64,000 nt of DNA, from the IMG/VR virus record IMGVR_UViG_3300017963_000190, positions 196,068 to 260,067 of that record; one strand, 5' to 3'. Under the pieces are notes generated by a model. The model saw only the letters and a program-made list of their open reading frames with translations. It did not search any database and was not told where the DNA came from. Positions 32,896 to 57,111 of this stretch are shown in pieces (positions within the stretch are counted from its first letter, which is position 1; each line of letters opens with the position of its first letter). The translations under genes were made by a program, and so were the position numbers.

Positions 32896-32965
32896 GGCCC
32901 TTCTTGTAGCTCAGCTGGTAGAGCATGGGACTCCGAGGTCGTGGGTTCGAGTCCCACCTGGCCCG
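32896..32965 (+). pseudogene. degenerate tRNA lacking an anticodon loop
   Basis: Canonical D-arm and T-arm; anticodon arm reduced to TGGGACTCCG; acceptor mispaired. Confidence 0.6.
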
Positions 32966-47953: not shown

Positions 47954-48114
47954 GCCAGTATATTCGAATCACCGATGGCATTTAAGCTGCTGCGTAAGGC
48001 ATTAAGTCTTGCGTGCTGTCTTTACACTACAAACCCATAAAGAGAGGGTTTGGCGGGAATCAAACCCGCACTTCAAGATAGTTTGTCGGCAGCGTTCGAG
48101 CCGGTGAAACTGGC
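47954..48114 (-). ncRNA. circularly permuted tRNA-like RNA (YrlA-type Y RNA candidate) 1
   Basis: Order is T-arm, loop-closed acceptor CAAACCC/GGGTTTG, D-arm, inside a long terminal stem. Confidence 0.65.
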
Positions 48115-49743: not shown

Positions 49744-49837
49744 TGCCGGGGACAGGACTTGAACCTGTAGTCGTCTGCGCAAGGGAACGTCTTCCCCATT
49801 GCTCTGAAACGAGTTCTGCCAGTTGAACTACCCCGAC
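49744..49837 (-). ncRNA. tRNA-like RNA with an enlarged anticodon arm
   Basis: Canonical acceptor, D- and T-arms; ~40-nt extended anticodon-arm hairpin. Confidence 0.65.
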
Positions 49838-49840
49838 GAG

Positions 49841-49915
49841 TGGTCGGTGAGGAATCGAACCTCATACAAGGAAGGCACGTATTCGTACCAACACCTGCAG
49901 CTCCACAGCCCGACC
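49841..49915 (-). ncRNA. D-armless tRNA-like RNA
   Basis: GGTCGG/CCGACC-A acceptor; TGAGG-TTCGATT-CCTCA T-arm. Confidence 0.55.
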
Positions 49916-53376: not shown

Positions 53377-54327
53377 ATGCTCAACGAAAAGGAGATCAGC
53401 ATGGGCAACGAGACCAACGTCAACGTCGACAACCTGAAGAGGGCTTTCGAGCGCATCGGCGCTCGCCTCGAAGTCACTGAGCTCGCCGCGGAGCGCCACA
53501 ACCGTCCGGTCAAGGACTGGCGCACCAAGAAGCTTTTCCACTGGCGGAAGGTTGATCCATTCTCCGCAAACGTGCGAAATGATGAGCTCGGTGAGCACTT
53601 CACCATGCGCATTGGGGACAATTCCATGGTTCCCGATGGCGCTTCCTCCACCGAGACCCCGGACCTGACGAAGATCCAGGTGCTCGATGTGCAACCCAAA
53701 GACAGGCATCTCCTCCTGCAGGTGGTTCTCGGCGAAGGCCGTGACATGCAGGTGGACAAGCTGCTCATGGGGCACGACGAGCGCCACTGGTTCATCGCCC
53801 GGTCCAACGGGTCCACCGTTCAAGAGGCCAAGGAAAACCTCAAGCCCGAGCTCGTACGCGAGCGTCAGAAGCGCAAGAAGGTCAAGCGGTCCAAGCGCAA
53901 CAAGCGCAAGAACGCTGCCTTCATCCGCCAGGGTGAGTGGTTCTTCATGCCGGAGCCGGATTTCTACCCGGACAAACGTGCCATCGTTACCAAGAATGAG
54001 CCACTGCGGCGGGGAGCTGGCAAGCCGCACATGGCCGAGGAGTGCTGCCGCATCGGTGGCCAGACGGTCATGTTCAACCGCAAGCATGCTCCCAACGGGA
54101 TCTCCATGGACGCGTACAACAAGCTGCGCAACGAAAAGGACCCCGGTGAGCTCAACAAAGACGGCCCGTGGCAACAGATGACGCGGGACGCGATGGTGTA
54201 TGTGCGCGGCAAGGTGCGCCACCCCGACCACAAGACCTTGAAGCTCAAGGGCTGGCATCAGGTGGTGCCCAACACCGAGCAGGTGCGTGTGCGCGGGCGT
54301 CTGCAAACCGTGGCTTTCTTGGACTAG
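53377..54327 (+). CDS. conserved hypothetical protein, GC-rich codon usage
   Basis: GHDERHWF...RQGEWFF...HPDHKTL. Confidence 0.75.
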   Translation: MLNEKEISMGNETNVNVDNLKRAFERIGARLEVTELAAERHNRPVKDWRTKKLFHWRKVDPFSANVRNDELGEHFTMRIGDNSMVPDGASSTETPDLTKIQVLDVQPKDRHLLLQVVLGEGRDMQVDKLLMGHDERHWFIARSNGSTVQEAKENLKPELVRERQKRKKVKRSKRNKRKNAAFIRQGEWFFMPEPDFYPDKRAIVTKNEPLRRGAGKPHMAEECCRIGGQTVMFNRKHAPNGISMDAYNKLRNEKDPGELNKDGPWQQMTRDAMVYVRGKVRHPDHKTLKLKGWHQVVPNTEQVRVRGRLQTVAFLD

Positions 54328-54384
54328 TTCATTTTTTCCATGCCCCAACTTGACAGCGTCAAAGCAGGCGTTTAGAGTTGGGGC

Positions 54385-54795
54385 ATGGAACCTACAGTCC
54401 CAGATTTAACTGTCGAGGTTTTTCTTTCGGCTGCTACCAGCATGCCTAACGCGTATTTGGATGAGAAGGAGTTCAGTCACATTTACGTGCGCAAGGGGCC
54501 GCGGGCGGTCATTTTTCCAGACGGTGCCCAAACTTTCGATGTAGTGTTTCAGGTGGCGCGCGTTGAAGCAAAGAAACCTGGTGACGGAGCACTGCGAAGA
54601 ATTATCGAACGCGTTGATCGTTTCAGCAGTTCTTCGTTACCTATTTACGTGGAGAACCTTTTCAACGAGGACGCCGTGCAGGGACTGCTGGCTTCGGATT
54701 TAGGCTTCGAGTTAGTTGATGTACCCATCAGTCCAGCTCCTTGTCTTTTTCGCGCGGCACCTTGTAAAATACAGGAGAGCGGCGAGCAACCTTGA
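54385..54795 (+). CDS. hypothetical protein (GNAT-like remnant?)
   Basis: Follows promoter TTGACA-17-TAGAGT (54350-54378). Confidence 0.5.
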   Translation: MEPTVPDLTVEVFLSAATSMPNAYLDEKEFSHIYVRKGPRAVIFPDGAQTFDVVFQVARVEAKKPGDGALRRIIERVDRFSSSSLPIYVENLFNEDAVQGLLASDLGFELVDVPISPAPCLFRAAPCKIQESGEQP

Positions 54796-54820
54796 CAAAC
54801 GCAGGTGTGCTGGCTACAGT
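54792..54820 (+). promoter_or_regulatory. sigma70 promoter of the ncRNA cluster
   Basis: TTGACA-17 nt-TACAGT. Confidence 0.7.
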
Positions 54821-54828
54821 TAAAGCAT

Positions 54829-55082
54829 TCCGCCTCCCTCTGGGATCCTGGCGGCGCGCTTACGCTACCGGATGAGCGAGGAGCCAAAAACGTGGGCCGA
54901 TCCTTGGCTGGTAGTTCGCGTGAAAATTAAAGTAAAGATCCCAGCGGCGCCTACGTCGAGAAGTGGGTCCTTGCTTGGAGGAGTCAAGGGTCACTTAAAG
55001 CCTCCCACGTGGTCCCGCCTGCTGGGCCTTAATTGACGGCAGGTAGTCCCGCTACAGCAGCGTGCACCTGCTTTGGTGGGGC
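54829..55082 (+). ncRNA. structured ncRNA candidate
   Basis: CTGGGATC/GATCCCAG stem; ACGTGGG/CCCACGT long-range pair; no credible ORF. Confidence 0.5.
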
Positions 55083-55086
55083 GCTT

Positions 55087-55157
55087 TCCGGCGTCGTCTA
55101 ACGGCAGGACGGCGGGTTCTGGCCCCGCAAATCGAGGTTCGAGTCCTCGCGTCGGAA
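55087..55157 (+). tRNA. tRNA-Gln(CTG)
   Basis: TT CTG GC loop; U1-A72. Confidence 0.9.
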
Positions 55158-55161
55158 TTGA

Positions 55162-55770
55162 CACCCAGCTCATTTTTCCATGATTTATTGAGCTGGGCAA
55201 CTGACAAAATCATGGTGAGGAAATGCAGGAACGGGTGAGGTTGCTGGTACGTAGCCTGTAAACCGAGTTTCCAATATTCGAGGCACTGGACAACCAGCAA
55301 ATCTGCCAACGTTCGGGTGGGCGCCCACGGCGTGGCGGAGATACTTAAAAGGCGTCCAGGCGGCAGGTGGGGCTACAGTGCAAGCCTGTCGTGGAGGGAG
55401 AGAGCGGACACGCATGCCCCACCTCTCTTCCGGACCCTCGTGTCTAGCTGCCTTCGTCTCGGCAGCGGGGGCGCGATGTAAGAGGGTGGAGGCGACTTCG
55501 TGAGCGCATTAGAAACCCTCCCTCCTAGGCAAGAGGGTAAAACTGCTAGACCCTGCTCACATGGTCTGAGCTGGCTGTAGAAGCTACGGTGGAGGTCAGT
55601 GTTTGAGGATCGAGCAGAAACAGGATGGCCCCTCGCGCCCTGTTGTAGGCTAGACGTGGGGTGTCGGTAGCGGCGAGCATTGGTGGCCCGCTTTGCTGTT
55701 CTGGCGCTCTCTTGGGTAACTGGGAGGTTTGACGAGTGGCTGCCTTATTGATGTTTCCTGAGCAGGAAGT
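55162..55770 (+). ncRNA. large (~600 nt) highly structured ncRNA candidate
   Basis: 5' pseudoknot, many helices, no ORF; embedded among tRNAs. Confidence 0.55.
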
Positions 55771-55782
55771 AAAAAGGTTTGT

Positions 55783-55923
55783 GCATGAGTGGCGAAACGG
55801 AGAAGCATTGCTTCTATGAAACGCTTTATCGGTAATTGAGACGTGGCCGATACATACCGACAAGGCTGCGGTGCAAACATCGCGGCGCTTCCGGATGCAG
55901 GGTTCGAGTCCCTGCCTCGTGCA
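55783..55923 (+). ncRNA. tRNA-Leu-like RNA A (7/6 fold, anticodon arm replaced)
   Basis: GCATGAG/CTCGTGC-A; GCAGGG-TTCGAGT-CCCTGC. Confidence 0.7.
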
Positions 55924-55955
55924 AAATCCTGGGCATGATAGCAAAAACTGCCCGT

Positions 55956-56100
55956 GCGTGTGATTGCGGAAAATTGGTCCGCTACAGCAAGTTGCAGCCA
56001 CCCTTAAAAGTGCTGCACAGACACGGCTTGCTACACCAGTACAGCTTGCGTAGTGCGCTACGTATTGTTGTGCGCAGGGTTCGAGTCCCTGCCGCGCGCA
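55956..56100 (+). ncRNA. tRNA-Leu-like RNA B
   Basis: GCGTGTG/CGCGCGC-A; same T-arm. Confidence 0.7.
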
Positions 56101-56160
56101 ACACTGTAAAGTACGAGGCCTGGTTGCGCACCCGATTAAGTTCAGGGGAAAGTCCAGGGT

Positions 56161-56306
56161 GCATGCGTGGTGGAAGAGGTAGACACTAACGAGTAAATCG
56201 TTGAGGGTAACACCAAAGGGATGAGGTTCGAGCCGGTGGCGTAACCGCTGCCGGTAAATAAGCCCCAGAGTCGAACCATGCAGGGTGCAAATCCCTGCCG
56301 CATGCA
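56161..56306 (+). ncRNA. tRNA-Leu-like RNA C
   Basis: GCATGCG/CGCATGC-A; D-arm TGGTGGAAGAGGTAGACAC; GCAGGG-TGCAAAT-CCCTGC. Confidence 0.75.
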
Positions 56307-56437
56307 GATTGGTTGCAACGCAGCGCGGGACTTCCCTGCTCTCGCGTGCTGTGACTTGCAGCTAACTGGGAGTGGATGCGTCTTTCAGGGAGGCTTTACT
56401 CACTCACAGCGACCTGGGATTGTCGTAAAAAGCACCA

Positions 56438-56559
56438 GCGTGGATGGCGGAAAAGGTAGACGCTACTGAATGGGTATGTCGAACTGCTGGCAAAGCCGAT
56501 AAATTTCACCCATGAATGTGCAGGACGACACTGCAGGGTGCAAATCCCTGCTCCACGCA
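56438..56559 (+). ncRNA. tRNA-Leu-like RNA D
   Basis: GCGTGGA/TCCACGC-A; D-arm TGGCGGAAAAGGTAGACGC; same T-arm as C. Confidence 0.75.
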
Positions 56560-56751
56560 AAGGTAGCACGACTATTTTTCAGTTGTGGTCGTAGCAGTAG
56601 CCAAACGAAAACGCCCGGTAACTGAACGCGAGTGAGAGTAGCCTTGGCCCAGCTCCTCCGGCGATCGGGATTAAATATGGGCCACTTTTAATCATGGTTC
56701 ACATTTTTCTGAGCAACGGTCTCCTGTTTTTAAATATTACAGGAGGTCAGT

Positions 56752-57111
56752 ATGAGCAGAACGAGGAGAAAACTGCCAGGCAGGTTCTTCAAAAAGGATC
56801 CCTGGTGCGGTGAACCAGATAGGGAGTGGTACGACAACTACCTGCTTGCGATGCAGCGAGGCCACTTGGTGGCTGGTTACGTGCACTGCTACCCGCGGAG
56901 AGATGGTGGGTACCGTTGGTACGAGACCGCAGAAGGCCCAGTATCCAAGCGGTACTACAAGAGGCTCGTGCGGAGATTTCGGCGCCGGGTGGCGAAGGAA
57001 AAAATAAGACAGCTCTCACAGGAGATAGAAAAAGATGCCGAAGAAAAAGAAACAGGCCAAAACAGAGGGCAGGCTTCGGAGGGCACGCAGATTAAAAGTA
57101 CCTGGCAATGA
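56752..57111 (+). CDS. Arg-rich basic protein (MSRTRRK type)
   Basis: AGGAGG SD. Confidence 0.6.
   Translation: MSRTRRKLPGRFFKKDPWCGEPDREWYDNYLLAMQRGHLVAGYVHCYPRRDGGYRWYETAEGPVSKRYYKRLVRRFRRRVAKEKIRQLSQEIEKDAEEKETGQNRGQASEGTQIKSTWQ

What the first reader, a model, noticed from the sequence alone, without database searches (positions are those of the whole stretch)
54829..55770. About 0.9 kb of ornate non-coding RNA around tRNA-Gln
After a strong promoter come a ~250-nt structured RNA, tRNA-Gln, an H-type pseudoknot (CCCAGCTCA/TGAGCTGGG with loop CCATGATTT pairing to AAATCATGG), and a ~550-nt multihelix domain (AGGAAAT/GTTTCCT closure; TTGCTGGT/ACCAGCAA; AGGTGGGG/CCCCACCT; GAGGGT/ACCCTC; CTGCTC/GAGCAG). 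Large phage ncRNAs near tRNAs are known (GOLLD, ROOL), but I cannot assign this one.
Basis: partly seen in the sequence, partly recalled or inferred. Interest (0 to 1): 0.6.

Follow-up and report, generated by a model that had tools for sequence, protein, structure and literature searches.

The report
New pseudoknotted RNA in phage tRNA-island
The 0.9-kb stretch is not one giant RNA but a row of separate non-coding RNA genes in the tRNA island of an uncultured jumbo phage, and one of them, about 275 nt long with two pseudoknots, is a conserved structured RNA that matches no described family and has no known function.

Summary
The window is the last 64 kb of a 260-kb phiKZ-like jumbo phage contig, and it holds all 37 of the contig's tRNAs. 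The promoter, tRNA-Gln(CUG) and H-type pseudoknot are all in the sequence as described. The pseudoknot is the 5' end of a ~275-nt module, M2 (55160-55432). M2 recurs in two other, much diverged phage lineages. Across nine helices and 60 pairs, 97% of cells are canonical and 27 pairs changed on both sides. This includes the pseudoknot and a second loop-loop pairing. No Rfam family matches (GOLLD, ROOL, tmRNA, RNase P), and no ORF is conserved.

The proposed "~550-nt domain" is not one unit. Its last 350 nt (55433-55782) occur in no relative and fold no better than shuffled sequence. The 5' ~200 nt (M1) is conserved, with weaker structural support.

Just beyond the finding lie four conserved 121-145-nt tRNA-like RNAs. 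In a related phage the slot that holds M2 here holds a genuine tmRNA.

My best reading is a mosaic operon of stable RNAs cut apart by tRNA-processing enzymes, with M2 a new trans-acting RNA. No RNA-seq data hold the locus, so transcription and function are inferred, not shown.

The parts
54792..54820 (+). Sigma-70-like promoter (perfect -35 hexamer, 17-nt spacer, -10-like hexamer). The expected start is near 54827.
   Evidence: scores it 10 of 12. One search shows a family of similar intergenic + strand sites. Equivalent promoters head the homologous islands in G001 (L020 ~595), L053 (~3122) and L054 (~12576), seen.
54822..55085 (+). Module M1, a leader-like non-coding RNA. The conserved core runs about 54822-55015. 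The last ~70 nt before the tRNA are specific to this phage.
   Evidence: Collinear conserved blocks are shared with G001, L054 and L144. G001 vs L054 is 72.7% over 172 nt (E 4e-21). G001 vs L144 is 81% (E 5e-39). The window copy is the most diverged: 69.7% over 76 nt to G001. The consensus fold is weak (-19.6 kcal/mol; 9 of 31 pairs with compensatory change). The single-sequence z-score is -0.92.
55086..55158 (+). tRNA-Gln, anticodon CUG
   Evidence: ARAGORN; Rfam tRNA model, 55.6 bits.
55160..55432 (+). Module M2, a conserved ~275-nt structured RNA with nine helices including two pseudoknots.
- H1: 55164-72 / 55189-97
- PK: 55178-86 / 55207-15
- H2: 55241-48 / 55293-300, with an inner hairpin 55264-68 / 55276-80
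- H3: 55301-08 / 55333-42, with an inner hairpin H3b 55317-20 / 55325-28
- H4: 55360-67 / 55385-92
- H5: 55396-404 / 55423-31
- Loop-loop pairing: 55369-73 / 55416-20
   Evidence: Homologues are L020 1300-1574 (G001) and L054 13239-13514. My coordinate-based count gives 168 of 173 cells canonical and 27 of 60 pairs changed on both sides. The tool count on the CM alignment of the 3' half gives 94.3% of cells paired against 44-49% when partners are slid. It gives 9 pairs with double changes against 1-2, and 0 of 500 shuffles reach the observed value. No Rfam match. No conserved ORF.
55433..55782 (+). Lineage-specific 350-nt tail between M2 and the first tRNA-like RNA. There is no evidence that it is a structured domain.
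   Evidence: No similarity to any of six related islands. Fold z-score -0.20. In G001 a tRNA-like RNA follows M2 directly, and in L054 the downstream gene's leader follows it directly. Only the last ~22 nt (about 55761-55782) resemble the sequence before the matching tRNA-like RNA in L053.
55783..55922 (+). tRNA-like RNA A (140 nt). It has a 7-bp acceptor stem, a D-arm with an inserted hairpin, two long central arms, a 6-bp T stem with a canonical T loop, an A after the acceptor, and no encoded CCA.
   Evidence: Fold z-score -3.98. Motif scan. Not called by ARAGORN or the Rfam tRNA model.
55956..56099 (+). tRNA-like RNA B (144 nt)
   Evidence: Fold z-score -3.01. Motif scan.
56161..56305 (+). 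tRNA-like RNA C (145 nt), with a variant T loop
   Evidence: Motif scan. Its orthologue in L142 (5266-5419) is 72.7% identical (E 3e-24). Nine of 40 pairs show compensatory change, including three in the acceptor stem.
56438..56558 (+). tRNA-like RNA D (121 nt), with a variant T loop
   Evidence: Motif scan. Orthologues occur in L142 and L144 at 75-78% identity (E 1e-25 to 7e-27). Acceptor and T stems are kept with compensatory changes.
56694..57111 (+). Conserved mini-ORF/hairpin that buries the ribosome-binding site (56694-56750), followed by a small basic protein gene (56752-57111, 119 aa). This marks the downstream end of the RNA island.
   Evidence: The leader is conserved with L054, G001 and L053. 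The protein family is shown.

Best explanation
The finding is part of a ~1.8-kb operon of stable, non-coding RNA genes (54792 to about 56600) in the tRNA island of an uncultured phiKZ-like jumbo phage. It is not one large RNA.

Shown:
- A promoter of the phage's common sigma-70-like type precedes the island.
- Behind it lie a conserved leader-like module M1, tRNA-Gln(CUG), and a conserved ~275-nt module M2. M2 starts with an H-type pseudoknot, continues through five further helices, and ends in two hairpins whose loops pair with each other.
- A non-conserved 350-nt tail follows, and then four conserved tRNA-shaped RNAs that lack an anticodon loop.
- M2's secondary and tertiary pairings are maintained by compensatory substitutions in three phage lineages. 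Their flanking proteins are only about 34-60% identical.
- The modules assort independently among related phages, so each is its own unit.

Inferred:
- The row is transcribed as one precursor and cut apart by the host's tRNA-processing enzymes. RNase P would cut at the 5' ends of the tRNA and the tRNA-like RNAs, and 3' trimming would act behind the tRNA.
- M2 would then begin a few bases before its pseudoknot. That matches G001, where a promoter sits there instead of a tRNA.
- M2 would end either at the short U-run after H5 (G001, L054) or, in this phage, at the first tRNA-like RNA.
- M2 then acts in trans as a compact, nuclease-resistant RNA that binds a protein or another RNA during infection.
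- The target is most plausibly in the translation or tRNA system. The neighbourhood in this clade is tRNAs, tRNA mimics, a tmRNA, a CCA-adding enzyme and a peptidyl-tRNA-hydrolase-like gene.
For: Context:
- The contig is a jumbo phage with a phiKZ-type tail sheath.
- All 37 tRNAs lie in the window.
- The promoter and its family are shown.

M2 conservation:
- A 73-nt core is 84% identical to G001.
- Covariance model R1 finds single copies in G000 (156.5 bits), G001 (162 bits) and L054 (77.6 bits, E 8e-21).

M2 structure:
- 60 pairs, 97.1% canonical, 27 with double-sided change.
- The 3' half is 94.3% paired against 44-49% with slid partners, has 9 against 1-2 double changes, and 0 of 500 shuffles reach it.
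- The pseudoknot's second stem has three compensatory positions, and the loop-loop pairing has one (G-C to A-U).
- G-U pairs on the + strand fit an RNA read from this strand.

Non-coding status and identity:
- No conserved ORF.
- No Rfam family.

Ends of M2:
- M2 follows a tRNA directly in two lineages (tRNA-Gln here, tRNA-Ala in L054) and a promoter in the third.

Modularity and neighbours:
- The mosaic pattern of modules is shown.
- The tRNA-like RNAs are conserved, with covarying stems.
- A tmRNA occupies the same slot in L142.
- Relatives carry a CCA-adding enzyme and a PTH2-like gene nearby.
Against: - There is no transcript evidence. The only public runs that hold the locus are DNA.
- Only three lineages carry M2. 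Close relatives (L053, L135, L144, L051, L142) lack it, so it is dispensable or replaceable.
- The alignment of the 5' half of M2 was made by hand from coordinates. The register within H1 and H2 is arbitrary, so their 'double changes' mainly show that a stem exists at the same place in each phage.
- Single-sequence folding energy is not significant (z -1.44 for M2).
- RNase P cleavage at the tRNA-like RNAs is untested.
- The function is pure inference from neighbourhood.
- A -35-like hexamer overlaps the start of M2 (55158-55163). If it were an active promoter, transcription would start inside stem 1. It lacks a convincing -10 hexamer.
Confidence: 0.6

Rival explanations
1. One reading: one ~0.9-kb ornate RNA of the GOLLD/ROOL kind with tRNA-Gln embedded in a linker. 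M1 would be the variable 5' domain and M2 plus the tail the 3' domain. It might assemble into an RNA-only multimer.
For: GOLLD and ROOL sit near phage tRNA islands, and tRNAs are sometimes inside the GOLLD linker. M1 and M2 co-occur, in the same order, in all three lineages that have M2.
Against: - There is no match to the GOLLD or ROOL models even at E<=10.
- M1 occurs without M2 in L144.
- What lies between M1 and M2 differs in every lineage: a tRNA here; about 360 nt plus a promoter in G001; two tRNAs plus 264 nt in L054.
- The tail and the proposed closing helix are not conserved.
- I did not look for pairing between M1 and M2, and none was evident.
Confidence: 0.1
2. M2 is a cis-acting 5' leader, either a ligand-sensing or a protein-binding control element. 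It would regulate the conserved small basic protein gene downstream, whose ribosome-binding site is buried in a conserved hairpin.
For: M2 is always upstream of that gene and on the same strand. In L054 it ends 16 nt before the gene's leader mini-ORF. The gene and its leader hairpin are conserved in all lineages.
Against: - In G001 about 640 nt with two tRNA-like RNAs separate M2 from the gene. In this window the gap is about 1260 nt with four. Cleavage at those RNAs would unlink M2 from the gene.
- L053, L142 and L144 have the gene and its leader but no M2.
Confidence: 0.12
3. M2 is a diverged functional stand-in for tmRNA, or its coding piece. A pseudoknot is followed by a short reading frame, and a neighbouring tRNA-like RNA would supply the acceptor function.
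For: L142 has a true tmRNA in the same slot, right after tRNA-Gln(CUG). G000 and the complete G001 have no tmRNA above threshold. In all three M2 copies a short open frame (6-15 codons) begins right after the pseudoknot (read).
Against: - There is no match to the tmRNA or permuted-tmRNA models.
- M2's ends do not pair into an acceptor stem.
- The short frames differ in length and sequence and lack the usual tag ending. Frames that short are expected by chance.
- The tRNA-like RNAs are self-contained and lack the G3-U70 pair.
- L144 and L053 have neither M2 nor a tmRNA within the loci fetched (12 to 13 kb).
Confidence: 0.06
4. The region is functionless spacer made of decayed tRNA and RNA genes, or the conserved blocks act at the DNA level, for example as a protein-binding or recombination site.
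For: The 350-nt tail looks like drift. The island is highly mosaic. Fold energies are not significant.
Against: Compensatory base changes that preserve nine helices, including long-range and loop-loop pairs, are not expected for DNA sites or decaying sequence. The 73-nt core is 84% identical, while the small basic proteins encoded just downstream are about 34% identical.
Confidence: 0.07

Closest known systems
GOLLD (RF01998) and ROOL (RF03087) large ornate RNAs
   Same: They are phage-encoded, non-coding and multi-pseudoknotted, have no known function, and typically lie in or beside tRNA islands. GOLLD sometimes has tRNAs between its domains (bioRxiv 10.1101/2024.12.08.627333).
   Different: M2 matches neither covariance model. 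It is only about 275 nt, against about 580 nt for ROOL (from my own knowledge) and over 800 nt for GOLLD. Its helix plan is different. It is known from three lineages only. Multimer formation is untested.
Phage T4 RNAC and RNAD (species 1 and 2 RNAs)
   Same: They are small stable phage RNAs of still unknown function (PMC9697503). From my own knowledge, they are encoded inside the T4 tRNA gene cluster and processed together with the tRNAs. That is the same logic I propose here.
   Different: I know of no sequence relation, and did not test for one. The T4 RNAs are shorter, and no double pseudoknot is described for them. The phage family and host are different.
tmRNA (RF00023)
   Same: A genuine tmRNA occupies the equivalent slot after tRNA-Gln(CUG) in the related contig L142. 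Both are pseudoknot-rich stable RNAs released by tRNA-type processing.
   Different: M2 has no tRNA-like domain made by its two ends, no recognisable tag frame, and no model match.
tRNA-like processing signals: the MALAT1/mascRNA system and plant mitochondrial t-elements
   Same: A tRNA-shaped element placed behind a long non-coding or messenger RNA lets RNase P define that RNA's 3' end (PMC8457004 and PMC1920247, listed). This is how I propose the tRNA-like RNAs delimit M2 and its tail. The only weak Rfam hits on these elements are to the mascRNA model.
   Different: Those systems are eukaryotic or organellar. Here the tRNA-like RNAs are themselves conserved, 121-145 nt long, and have conserved central arms. 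They are probably functional RNAs in their own right and not mere punctuation.
YrlA (bacterial Y RNA-like, RF02553)
   Same: YrlA is a modular RNA with a tRNA-mimicking domain (T arm, D arm, acceptor-like stem). Weak sub-threshold YrlA hits occur elsewhere in this phage clade.
   Different: There is no YrlA hit on 54000-57000. In the tRNA-like RNAs here the two ends form the acceptor stem. From my own knowledge, in YrlA the ends form the protein-binding stem.

Membership tests
GOLLD RNA (RF01998) | Match to the family covariance model (conserved 3' domain) | tested here: not met
   cmscan of 54000-57000 at E<=10 with permissive filters lists no GOLLD hit. The whole-window scan at gathering threshold finds none either.
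GOLLD RNA (RF01998) | Phage or prophage location next to tRNA genes | tested here: met
   The contig is a jumbo phage. M2 lies directly after tRNA-Gln, in an island of 37 tRNAs.
ROOL RNA (RF03087) | Match to the family covariance model | tested here: not met
   No hit at E<=10.
GOLLD/ROOL kind | Assembly into RNA-only multimeric cages | not testable with these tools
   This needs native gels or cryo-EM of the transcribed RNA.
tmRNA (RF00023, RF04321) | tRNA-like domain formed by the 5' and 3' ends with a G3-U70 pair, a tag reading frame, and a model match | tested here: not met
   ARAGORN finds no tmRNA. Rfam gives no hit in the region. In G000 and G001 only tRNA genes and short T-arm-like pieces score, all below the cut-off. 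As a positive control, L142's tmRNA scores 112.3 bits.
Bacterial RNase P RNA | Model match, and conserved P4 strands kept among homologues | tested here: not met
   No Rfam RNase P hit. A motif resembling the 5' P4 strand at about 55218-55230 is absent from the G001 and L054 copies. The candidate 3' strand is paired in H4 instead, with covariation.
H-type pseudoknot (structural class) | A hairpin whose loop pairs with sequence downstream, with both stems supported | tested here: met
   Stem 1 is present in all three phages with unrelated sequences. Stem 2 is 7-9 bp, with three positions changed on both sides and no mismatch (sequences).
Canonical tRNA (for the four tRNA-like RNAs) | Cloverleaf with a 5-bp anticodon stem and 7-nt anticodon loop, a 12-bp acceptor/T stack, and detection by ARAGORN or the Rfam tRNA model | tested here: not met
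   They are not called even with introns allowed. They are 121-145 nt long with a 7-bp acceptor plus a 6-bp T stem. The central arms carry no standard anticodon loop. The acceptor stem, the D arm with GG, and the T arm are present.
Riboswitch or cis-regulatory leader | Fixed position directly upstream of the regulated gene across homologues | tested here: not met
   The distance from M2 to the next gene is 16 nt in L054, about 640 nt in G001 and about 1260 nt here, with tRNA-like RNAs in between.

The most novel reading that the evidence does not exclude
M2, together with the conserved anticodon-less tRNA-shaped RNAs beside it, would be a new class of phage RNA aimed at the host translation or tRNA-surveillance machinery. 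It might act as a decoy or scaffold, possibly as a particle with the adjacent small basic zinc-ribbon-like protein. In this phage clade it would be interchangeable with a phage tmRNA at one genomic slot.
Probability: 0.12. Interest if true: 0.8.

Novelty: new variant of a known kind. Interest (0 to 1): 0.55.

Why it matters
Large structured phage RNAs next to tRNA islands (GOLLD, ROOL) are among the best-known orphan RNAs. Their structures are solved, but their function is not. This locus adds a compact member of that kind, about 275 nt with two covariation-supported pseudoknots. It sits among unusually informative neighbours. The same slot holds a tmRNA in a sister phage. The flanks hold conserved tRNA mimics without anticodon loops. 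Relatives also carry a CCA-adding enzyme gene and a peptidyl-tRNA-hydrolase-like gene nearby. That points experiments towards translation and tRNA biology, and M2 is small enough for probing and structure work. It also shows that jumbo-phage tRNA islands can be mosaics of several exchangeable non-coding RNA genes, which gene callers leave blank.

Tried and rejected
1. RNase P RNA. A motif resembling the 5' P4 strand after the pseudoknot, and a second one at about 56146, made me consider a phage RNase P RNA. I rejected it because there is no model hit. The motifs are also not conserved, and the would-be 3' strand pairs in H4.

2. tmRNA or two-piece tmRNA: no model or ARAGORN hit.

3. A protein gene on the minus strand over M2. 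The ORFs in the window and in G001 resemble each other only across the conserved nucleotide core, with a gap. L054 has no spanning ORF.

4. A covariance model of the 5' half of M2 built from the window sequence alone (R2). It did not find the G001 copy and found only part of L054. I therefore counted that half by coordinates in a script.

5. L053 as a fourth M1 copy. BLAST shows its leader matches a different G001 module (M3, L020 981-1257). The apparent compensatory change seen is therefore not valid.

6. Pattern scans for more M2 copies.
- IMG/VR scans were.
- The JGI metagenome scan was.
- The GTDB genome scans were.
- They returned only the known contigs plus chance hits (L044, L059-L067), which fail the model.

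7. The model R1 search of 65 loci around homologues of the neighbouring 316-aa protein, and of 30 whole jumbo-phage records, found nothing.

8. Expression evidence. No RNA run holds the locus. Two DNA runs hold contigs identical to the window, so they give no variants.

9. Cultured phages. There is no DNA match beyond tRNAs, and the two neighbouring proteins have no tblastn match.

10. Complex prediction and protein structure prediction were not used, because no protein-binding claim is made.

Full report
**Context**

The window is bases 196068-260067 of a 260,067-bp IMG/VR virus contig that is estimated to be 74% complete.
- Its tail sheath matches the phiKZ-type sheath family. It is 35-40% identical to PhiPA3, Noxifer and phiKZ.
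- All 37 tRNA genes of the contig lie in the window.
- A near-identical contig exists in IMG/VR.
- Two public DNA runs hold identical sequence. No RNA run holds it.

**Checking the observation**

- A sigma-70-like promoter lies at 54792-54820, with a perfect -35 hexamer, a 17-nt spacer and 10 of 12 matches. About a dozen similar sites lie between genes on the + strand.
- tRNA-Gln(CUG) is at 55086-55158.
- The pseudoknot is exact. Stem 1 is 55164-72 / 55189-97, and loop bases 55178-86 pair with 55207-15.
- No ORF longer than 85 aa lies within 54830-55780.
- Rfam 15 gives nothing but the tRNA, even at E<=10. The only other rows are chance-level microRNA, mascRNA and HBV-epsilon hits. There is no GOLLD, ROOL, tmRNA, RNase P or YrlA hit.
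- Folding energies are not distinctive. The z-score is -1.57 for 55159-55780 and -0.92 for 54822-55085.

Everything therefore depends on comparison with relatives.

**Relatives**

- A sheath-based scan found a complete 349,793-bp relative, G001, with 72% sheath identity. A DNA search of G001 gave one hit, 84% identical over window 55360-55432.
- The G001 locus (L020) is syntenic. It has a promoter, about 1.6 kb without genes, two tRNA-like elements, a small ORF, tRNA-Gln(UUG) and tRNA-Val(UAC), as in the window.
- The neighbouring 316-aa protein (53377-54327) has many relatives. The small basic protein downstream (56752-57111) has a few.
- Their contigs gave five more related islands:
  - L053;
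  - L054, with L055-L057 from the same phage;
  - L135 and L136;
  - L142 and L143;
  - L144-L146.

**The conserved module M2 (55160-55432)**

- Window 55159-55440 aligns collinearly with L020 1296-1582.
- A covariance model of the 3' half (R1, from alignment A3) finds one copy in each of three records. These are G000 at 156.5 bits, G001 at 162 bits, and L054 13376-13514 at 77.6 bits (E 8e-21).
- From the rulers I mapped nine helices in all three sequences and counted them by coordinates. Of 173 cells, 168 are canonical (97.1%). Of 60 pairs, 27 changed on both sides, 4 changed on one side only, and 25 are invariant.
- Stem 1 of the pseudoknot has a different sequence in each phage.
- Stem 2 keeps six identical pairs. 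Three positions change A-T to G-C or T-A to C-G on both strands, with no mismatch.
- The tool count on the CM-made alignment of the 3' half includes the loop-loop pairing. It gives 94.3% of cells paired against 44-49% with slid partners. It gives 9 pairs with double changes against 1-2, and 0 of 500 shuffles reach the observed value. The two-sequence count agrees.
- The loop-loop pairing 55369-73 / 55416-20 has a G-C to A-U change in L054.
In G001 and L054 its outer pairs are broken. H4 and H5, which use those flanking bases, are 100% and 96% paired.
- No ORF is conserved over M2 on either strand.

M2 is thus a real, conserved, doubly pseudoknotted RNA element.

**The ends of M2**

- In the window M2 starts 2-6 nt after tRNA-Gln.
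- In L054 it starts 1 nt after a tRNA-Ala.
- In G001 a promoter of the usual type lies about 33 nt upstream instead.
- In G001 and L054, H5 is followed by a short U-run. After that comes a tRNA-like RNA in G001, or the leader of the small ORF in L054.
- The window lacks the U-run and continues into 350 more bases.

**What is not conserved**

- Window 55433-55782 matches nothing in six related islands. It also folds like shuffled sequence, with a z-score of -0.20.
They have no support.

**M1 (54822 to about 55015)**

- Conserved blocks are shared with G001, L054 and L144.
- The window copy is the most diverged.
- The consensus fold is weak.
- An apparent fourth copy in L053 turned out to match a different G001 module, M3.

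**A mosaic of modules**

| Module | Lineages that carry it |
|---|---|
| M1 | window, G001, L054, L144 |
| M2 | window, G001, L054 |
| M3 | G001, L053 |
| A further shared module | L053 and L135 (seen by eye; BLAST did not compare this pair) |
| tmRNA in the slot directly behind tRNA-Gln(CUG) | L142 |

- L142's tmRNA scores 112.3 bits in Rfam. ARAGORN reads the tag as ANDNNVPMEVALAA.
- Neither G000 nor the complete G001 has a tmRNA above threshold.
- R1 finds no further copy in 65 loci around homologues of the 316-aa protein or in 30 whole jumbo-phage records. Pattern scans of IMG/VR, the JGI metagenomes and the GTDB genomes also find none.

**Beyond the reported end: four tRNA-like RNAs**

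- A scan looked for three things together: a 6-bp T stem, a T loop, and a 7-bp acceptor stem. It finds exactly four such elements on the + strand of the whole 260-kb contig (one weak candidate on the minus strand looks like chance). They lie at 55783-55922, 55956-56099, 56161-56305 and 56438-56558.
- They are 121-145 nt long. Each has a D arm with GG, an A after the acceptor stem and no encoded CCA. None has a standard anticodon loop.
- ARAGORN and the Rfam tRNA model do not call them.
- A and B fold better than shuffles, with z-scores of -3.98 and -3.01.
- C and D have orthologues in L142 and L144 at 73-78% identity, with compensatory changes in the acceptor, D and T stems.
- The spacer after L142's tmRNA matches the spacer after element A of the window.

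**Mechanism**

The map, the conservation and the base-pairing are shown. The rest is inferred.
- The row would be transcribed from 54792 and cut by tRNA-processing enzymes into M1, tRNA-Gln, M2 (with its tail in this phage) and the tRNA-like RNAs. T4 releases its RNAC and RNAD from its tRNA cluster in a similar way (function still unknown, PMC9697503; their location is from my own knowledge).
- tRNA-like elements define RNA ends in the same manner in MALAT1 and in plant mitochondria (PMC8457004 and PMC1920247).
- A terminal pseudoknot would suit a stable trans-acting RNA.
- The neighbourhood in this clade points towards translation or tRNA surveillance. It holds tRNAs, tRNA mimics, a tmRNA, a CCA-adding enzyme and a PTH2-like gene. 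That link remains a guess.

**Rivals**

The rivals are weighed in their own section of this report. They are:
- a single GOLLD-like RNA;
- a cis-acting leader of the small basic gene;
- a tmRNA analogue;
- functionless spacer.

**Comparison and novelty**

- M2 works like the GOLLD/ROOL kind of RNA in three respects. It is a phage RNA, it lies beside tRNAs, and it is rich in pseudoknots.
- It fails the membership test for both families, and for tmRNA and RNase P RNA.
- It is a new, narrowly distributed family within a known kind.

**Limits**

- There are no expression data.
- Only three lineages carry M2.
- The 5' half of M2 was aligned by hand.
- Function is unknown.

Noticed in passing
window 55783-55922, 55956-56099, 56161-56305, 56438-56558: Four tandem 121-145-nt tRNA-shaped RNAs. 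Each has a 7-bp acceptor stem, a D arm, a 6-bp T stem and an A after the acceptor, but no anticodon loop. They are the only such + strand elements in the 260-kb contig. C and D have conserved orthologues with covarying stems in other phages. Their function is unknown.
   Followed up: partly
L142 4874-5237: A related jumbo-phage contig carries a genuine tmRNA (Rfam 112.3 bits; tag ANDNNVPMEVALAA). It lies directly after tRNA-Gln(CUG), in the slot that holds M2 in this window. G000 and the complete relative G001 have no tmRNA above threshold.
   Followed up: partly
window 56694-57111: A small basic protein (119 aa here, 79-87 aa in relatives, starting MSRT) is conserved. In some copies it has a CxxC-like motif. 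A conserved mini-ORF precedes it, together with a hairpin that buries the ribosome-binding site. This looks like translational coupling or control.
   Followed up: partly
window 53377-54327: This 316-aa protein has no Pfam family. It has 50-77% identical copies in related phage contigs and about 43% identical chromosomal copies in Planctomycetota (Gimesia, Paludisphaera). That hints at the host phylum.
   Followed up: no
window, + strand: 11540, 26225, 32769, 33504, 35804, 39480, 41483, 42500, 53172, 54350, 54792: A family of near-consensus sigma-70-like promoters, each with a perfect -35 hexamer and a -10-like hexamer at 17-18 nt, lies in front of genes and tRNA clusters. The -35 hexamer occurs 25 times on the + strand of the window and 12 times on the minus strand, against about 16 expected.
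   Followed up: partly
window about 16655, 32945, 40330, 48310: Orphan T-arm-like motifs lie outside any called tRNA. The one near 32945 falls in a partial tRNA-model hit at 32906-32958. They may be degenerate or unusual tRNA-like elements.
   Followed up: no
window 49813-49868(-) and 48013-48070(-); L054 2308-2416(-): Sub-threshold matches to the Y RNA-like YrlA model (21-38 bits against a cut-off of 69) lie near minus-strand odd tRNAs and a DUF7873 gene. This is a possible further tRNA-mimic RNA in the clade.
   Followed up: no
L135 3112-3375: A ~265-nt non-coding element closed by a ~12-bp helix lies just upstream of tRNA-Val in a relative with lower G+C. It contains a short motif resembling the RNase P P4 strand but has no Rfam match. 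It is another unassigned module of these islands.
   Followed up: no
L054 10455-11966; L144 3127-4644; L053 205-657; L051 12024-12878: Next to the same tRNA/RNA island, relatives encode a CCA-adding enzyme (PolyA_pol plus HD), a PTH2-like peptidyl-tRNA hydrolase, a PARG-like protein, NAD synthase and NAPRTase.
   Followed up: no
window 55158-55163: A perfect -35-like hexamer sits directly after tRNA-Gln(CUG) and overlaps the start of M2. The same hexamer follows tRNA-Gln in L142, 30 nt before its tmRNA. In the window it lacks a convincing -10 hexamer, so its role is unclear.
   Followed up: partly
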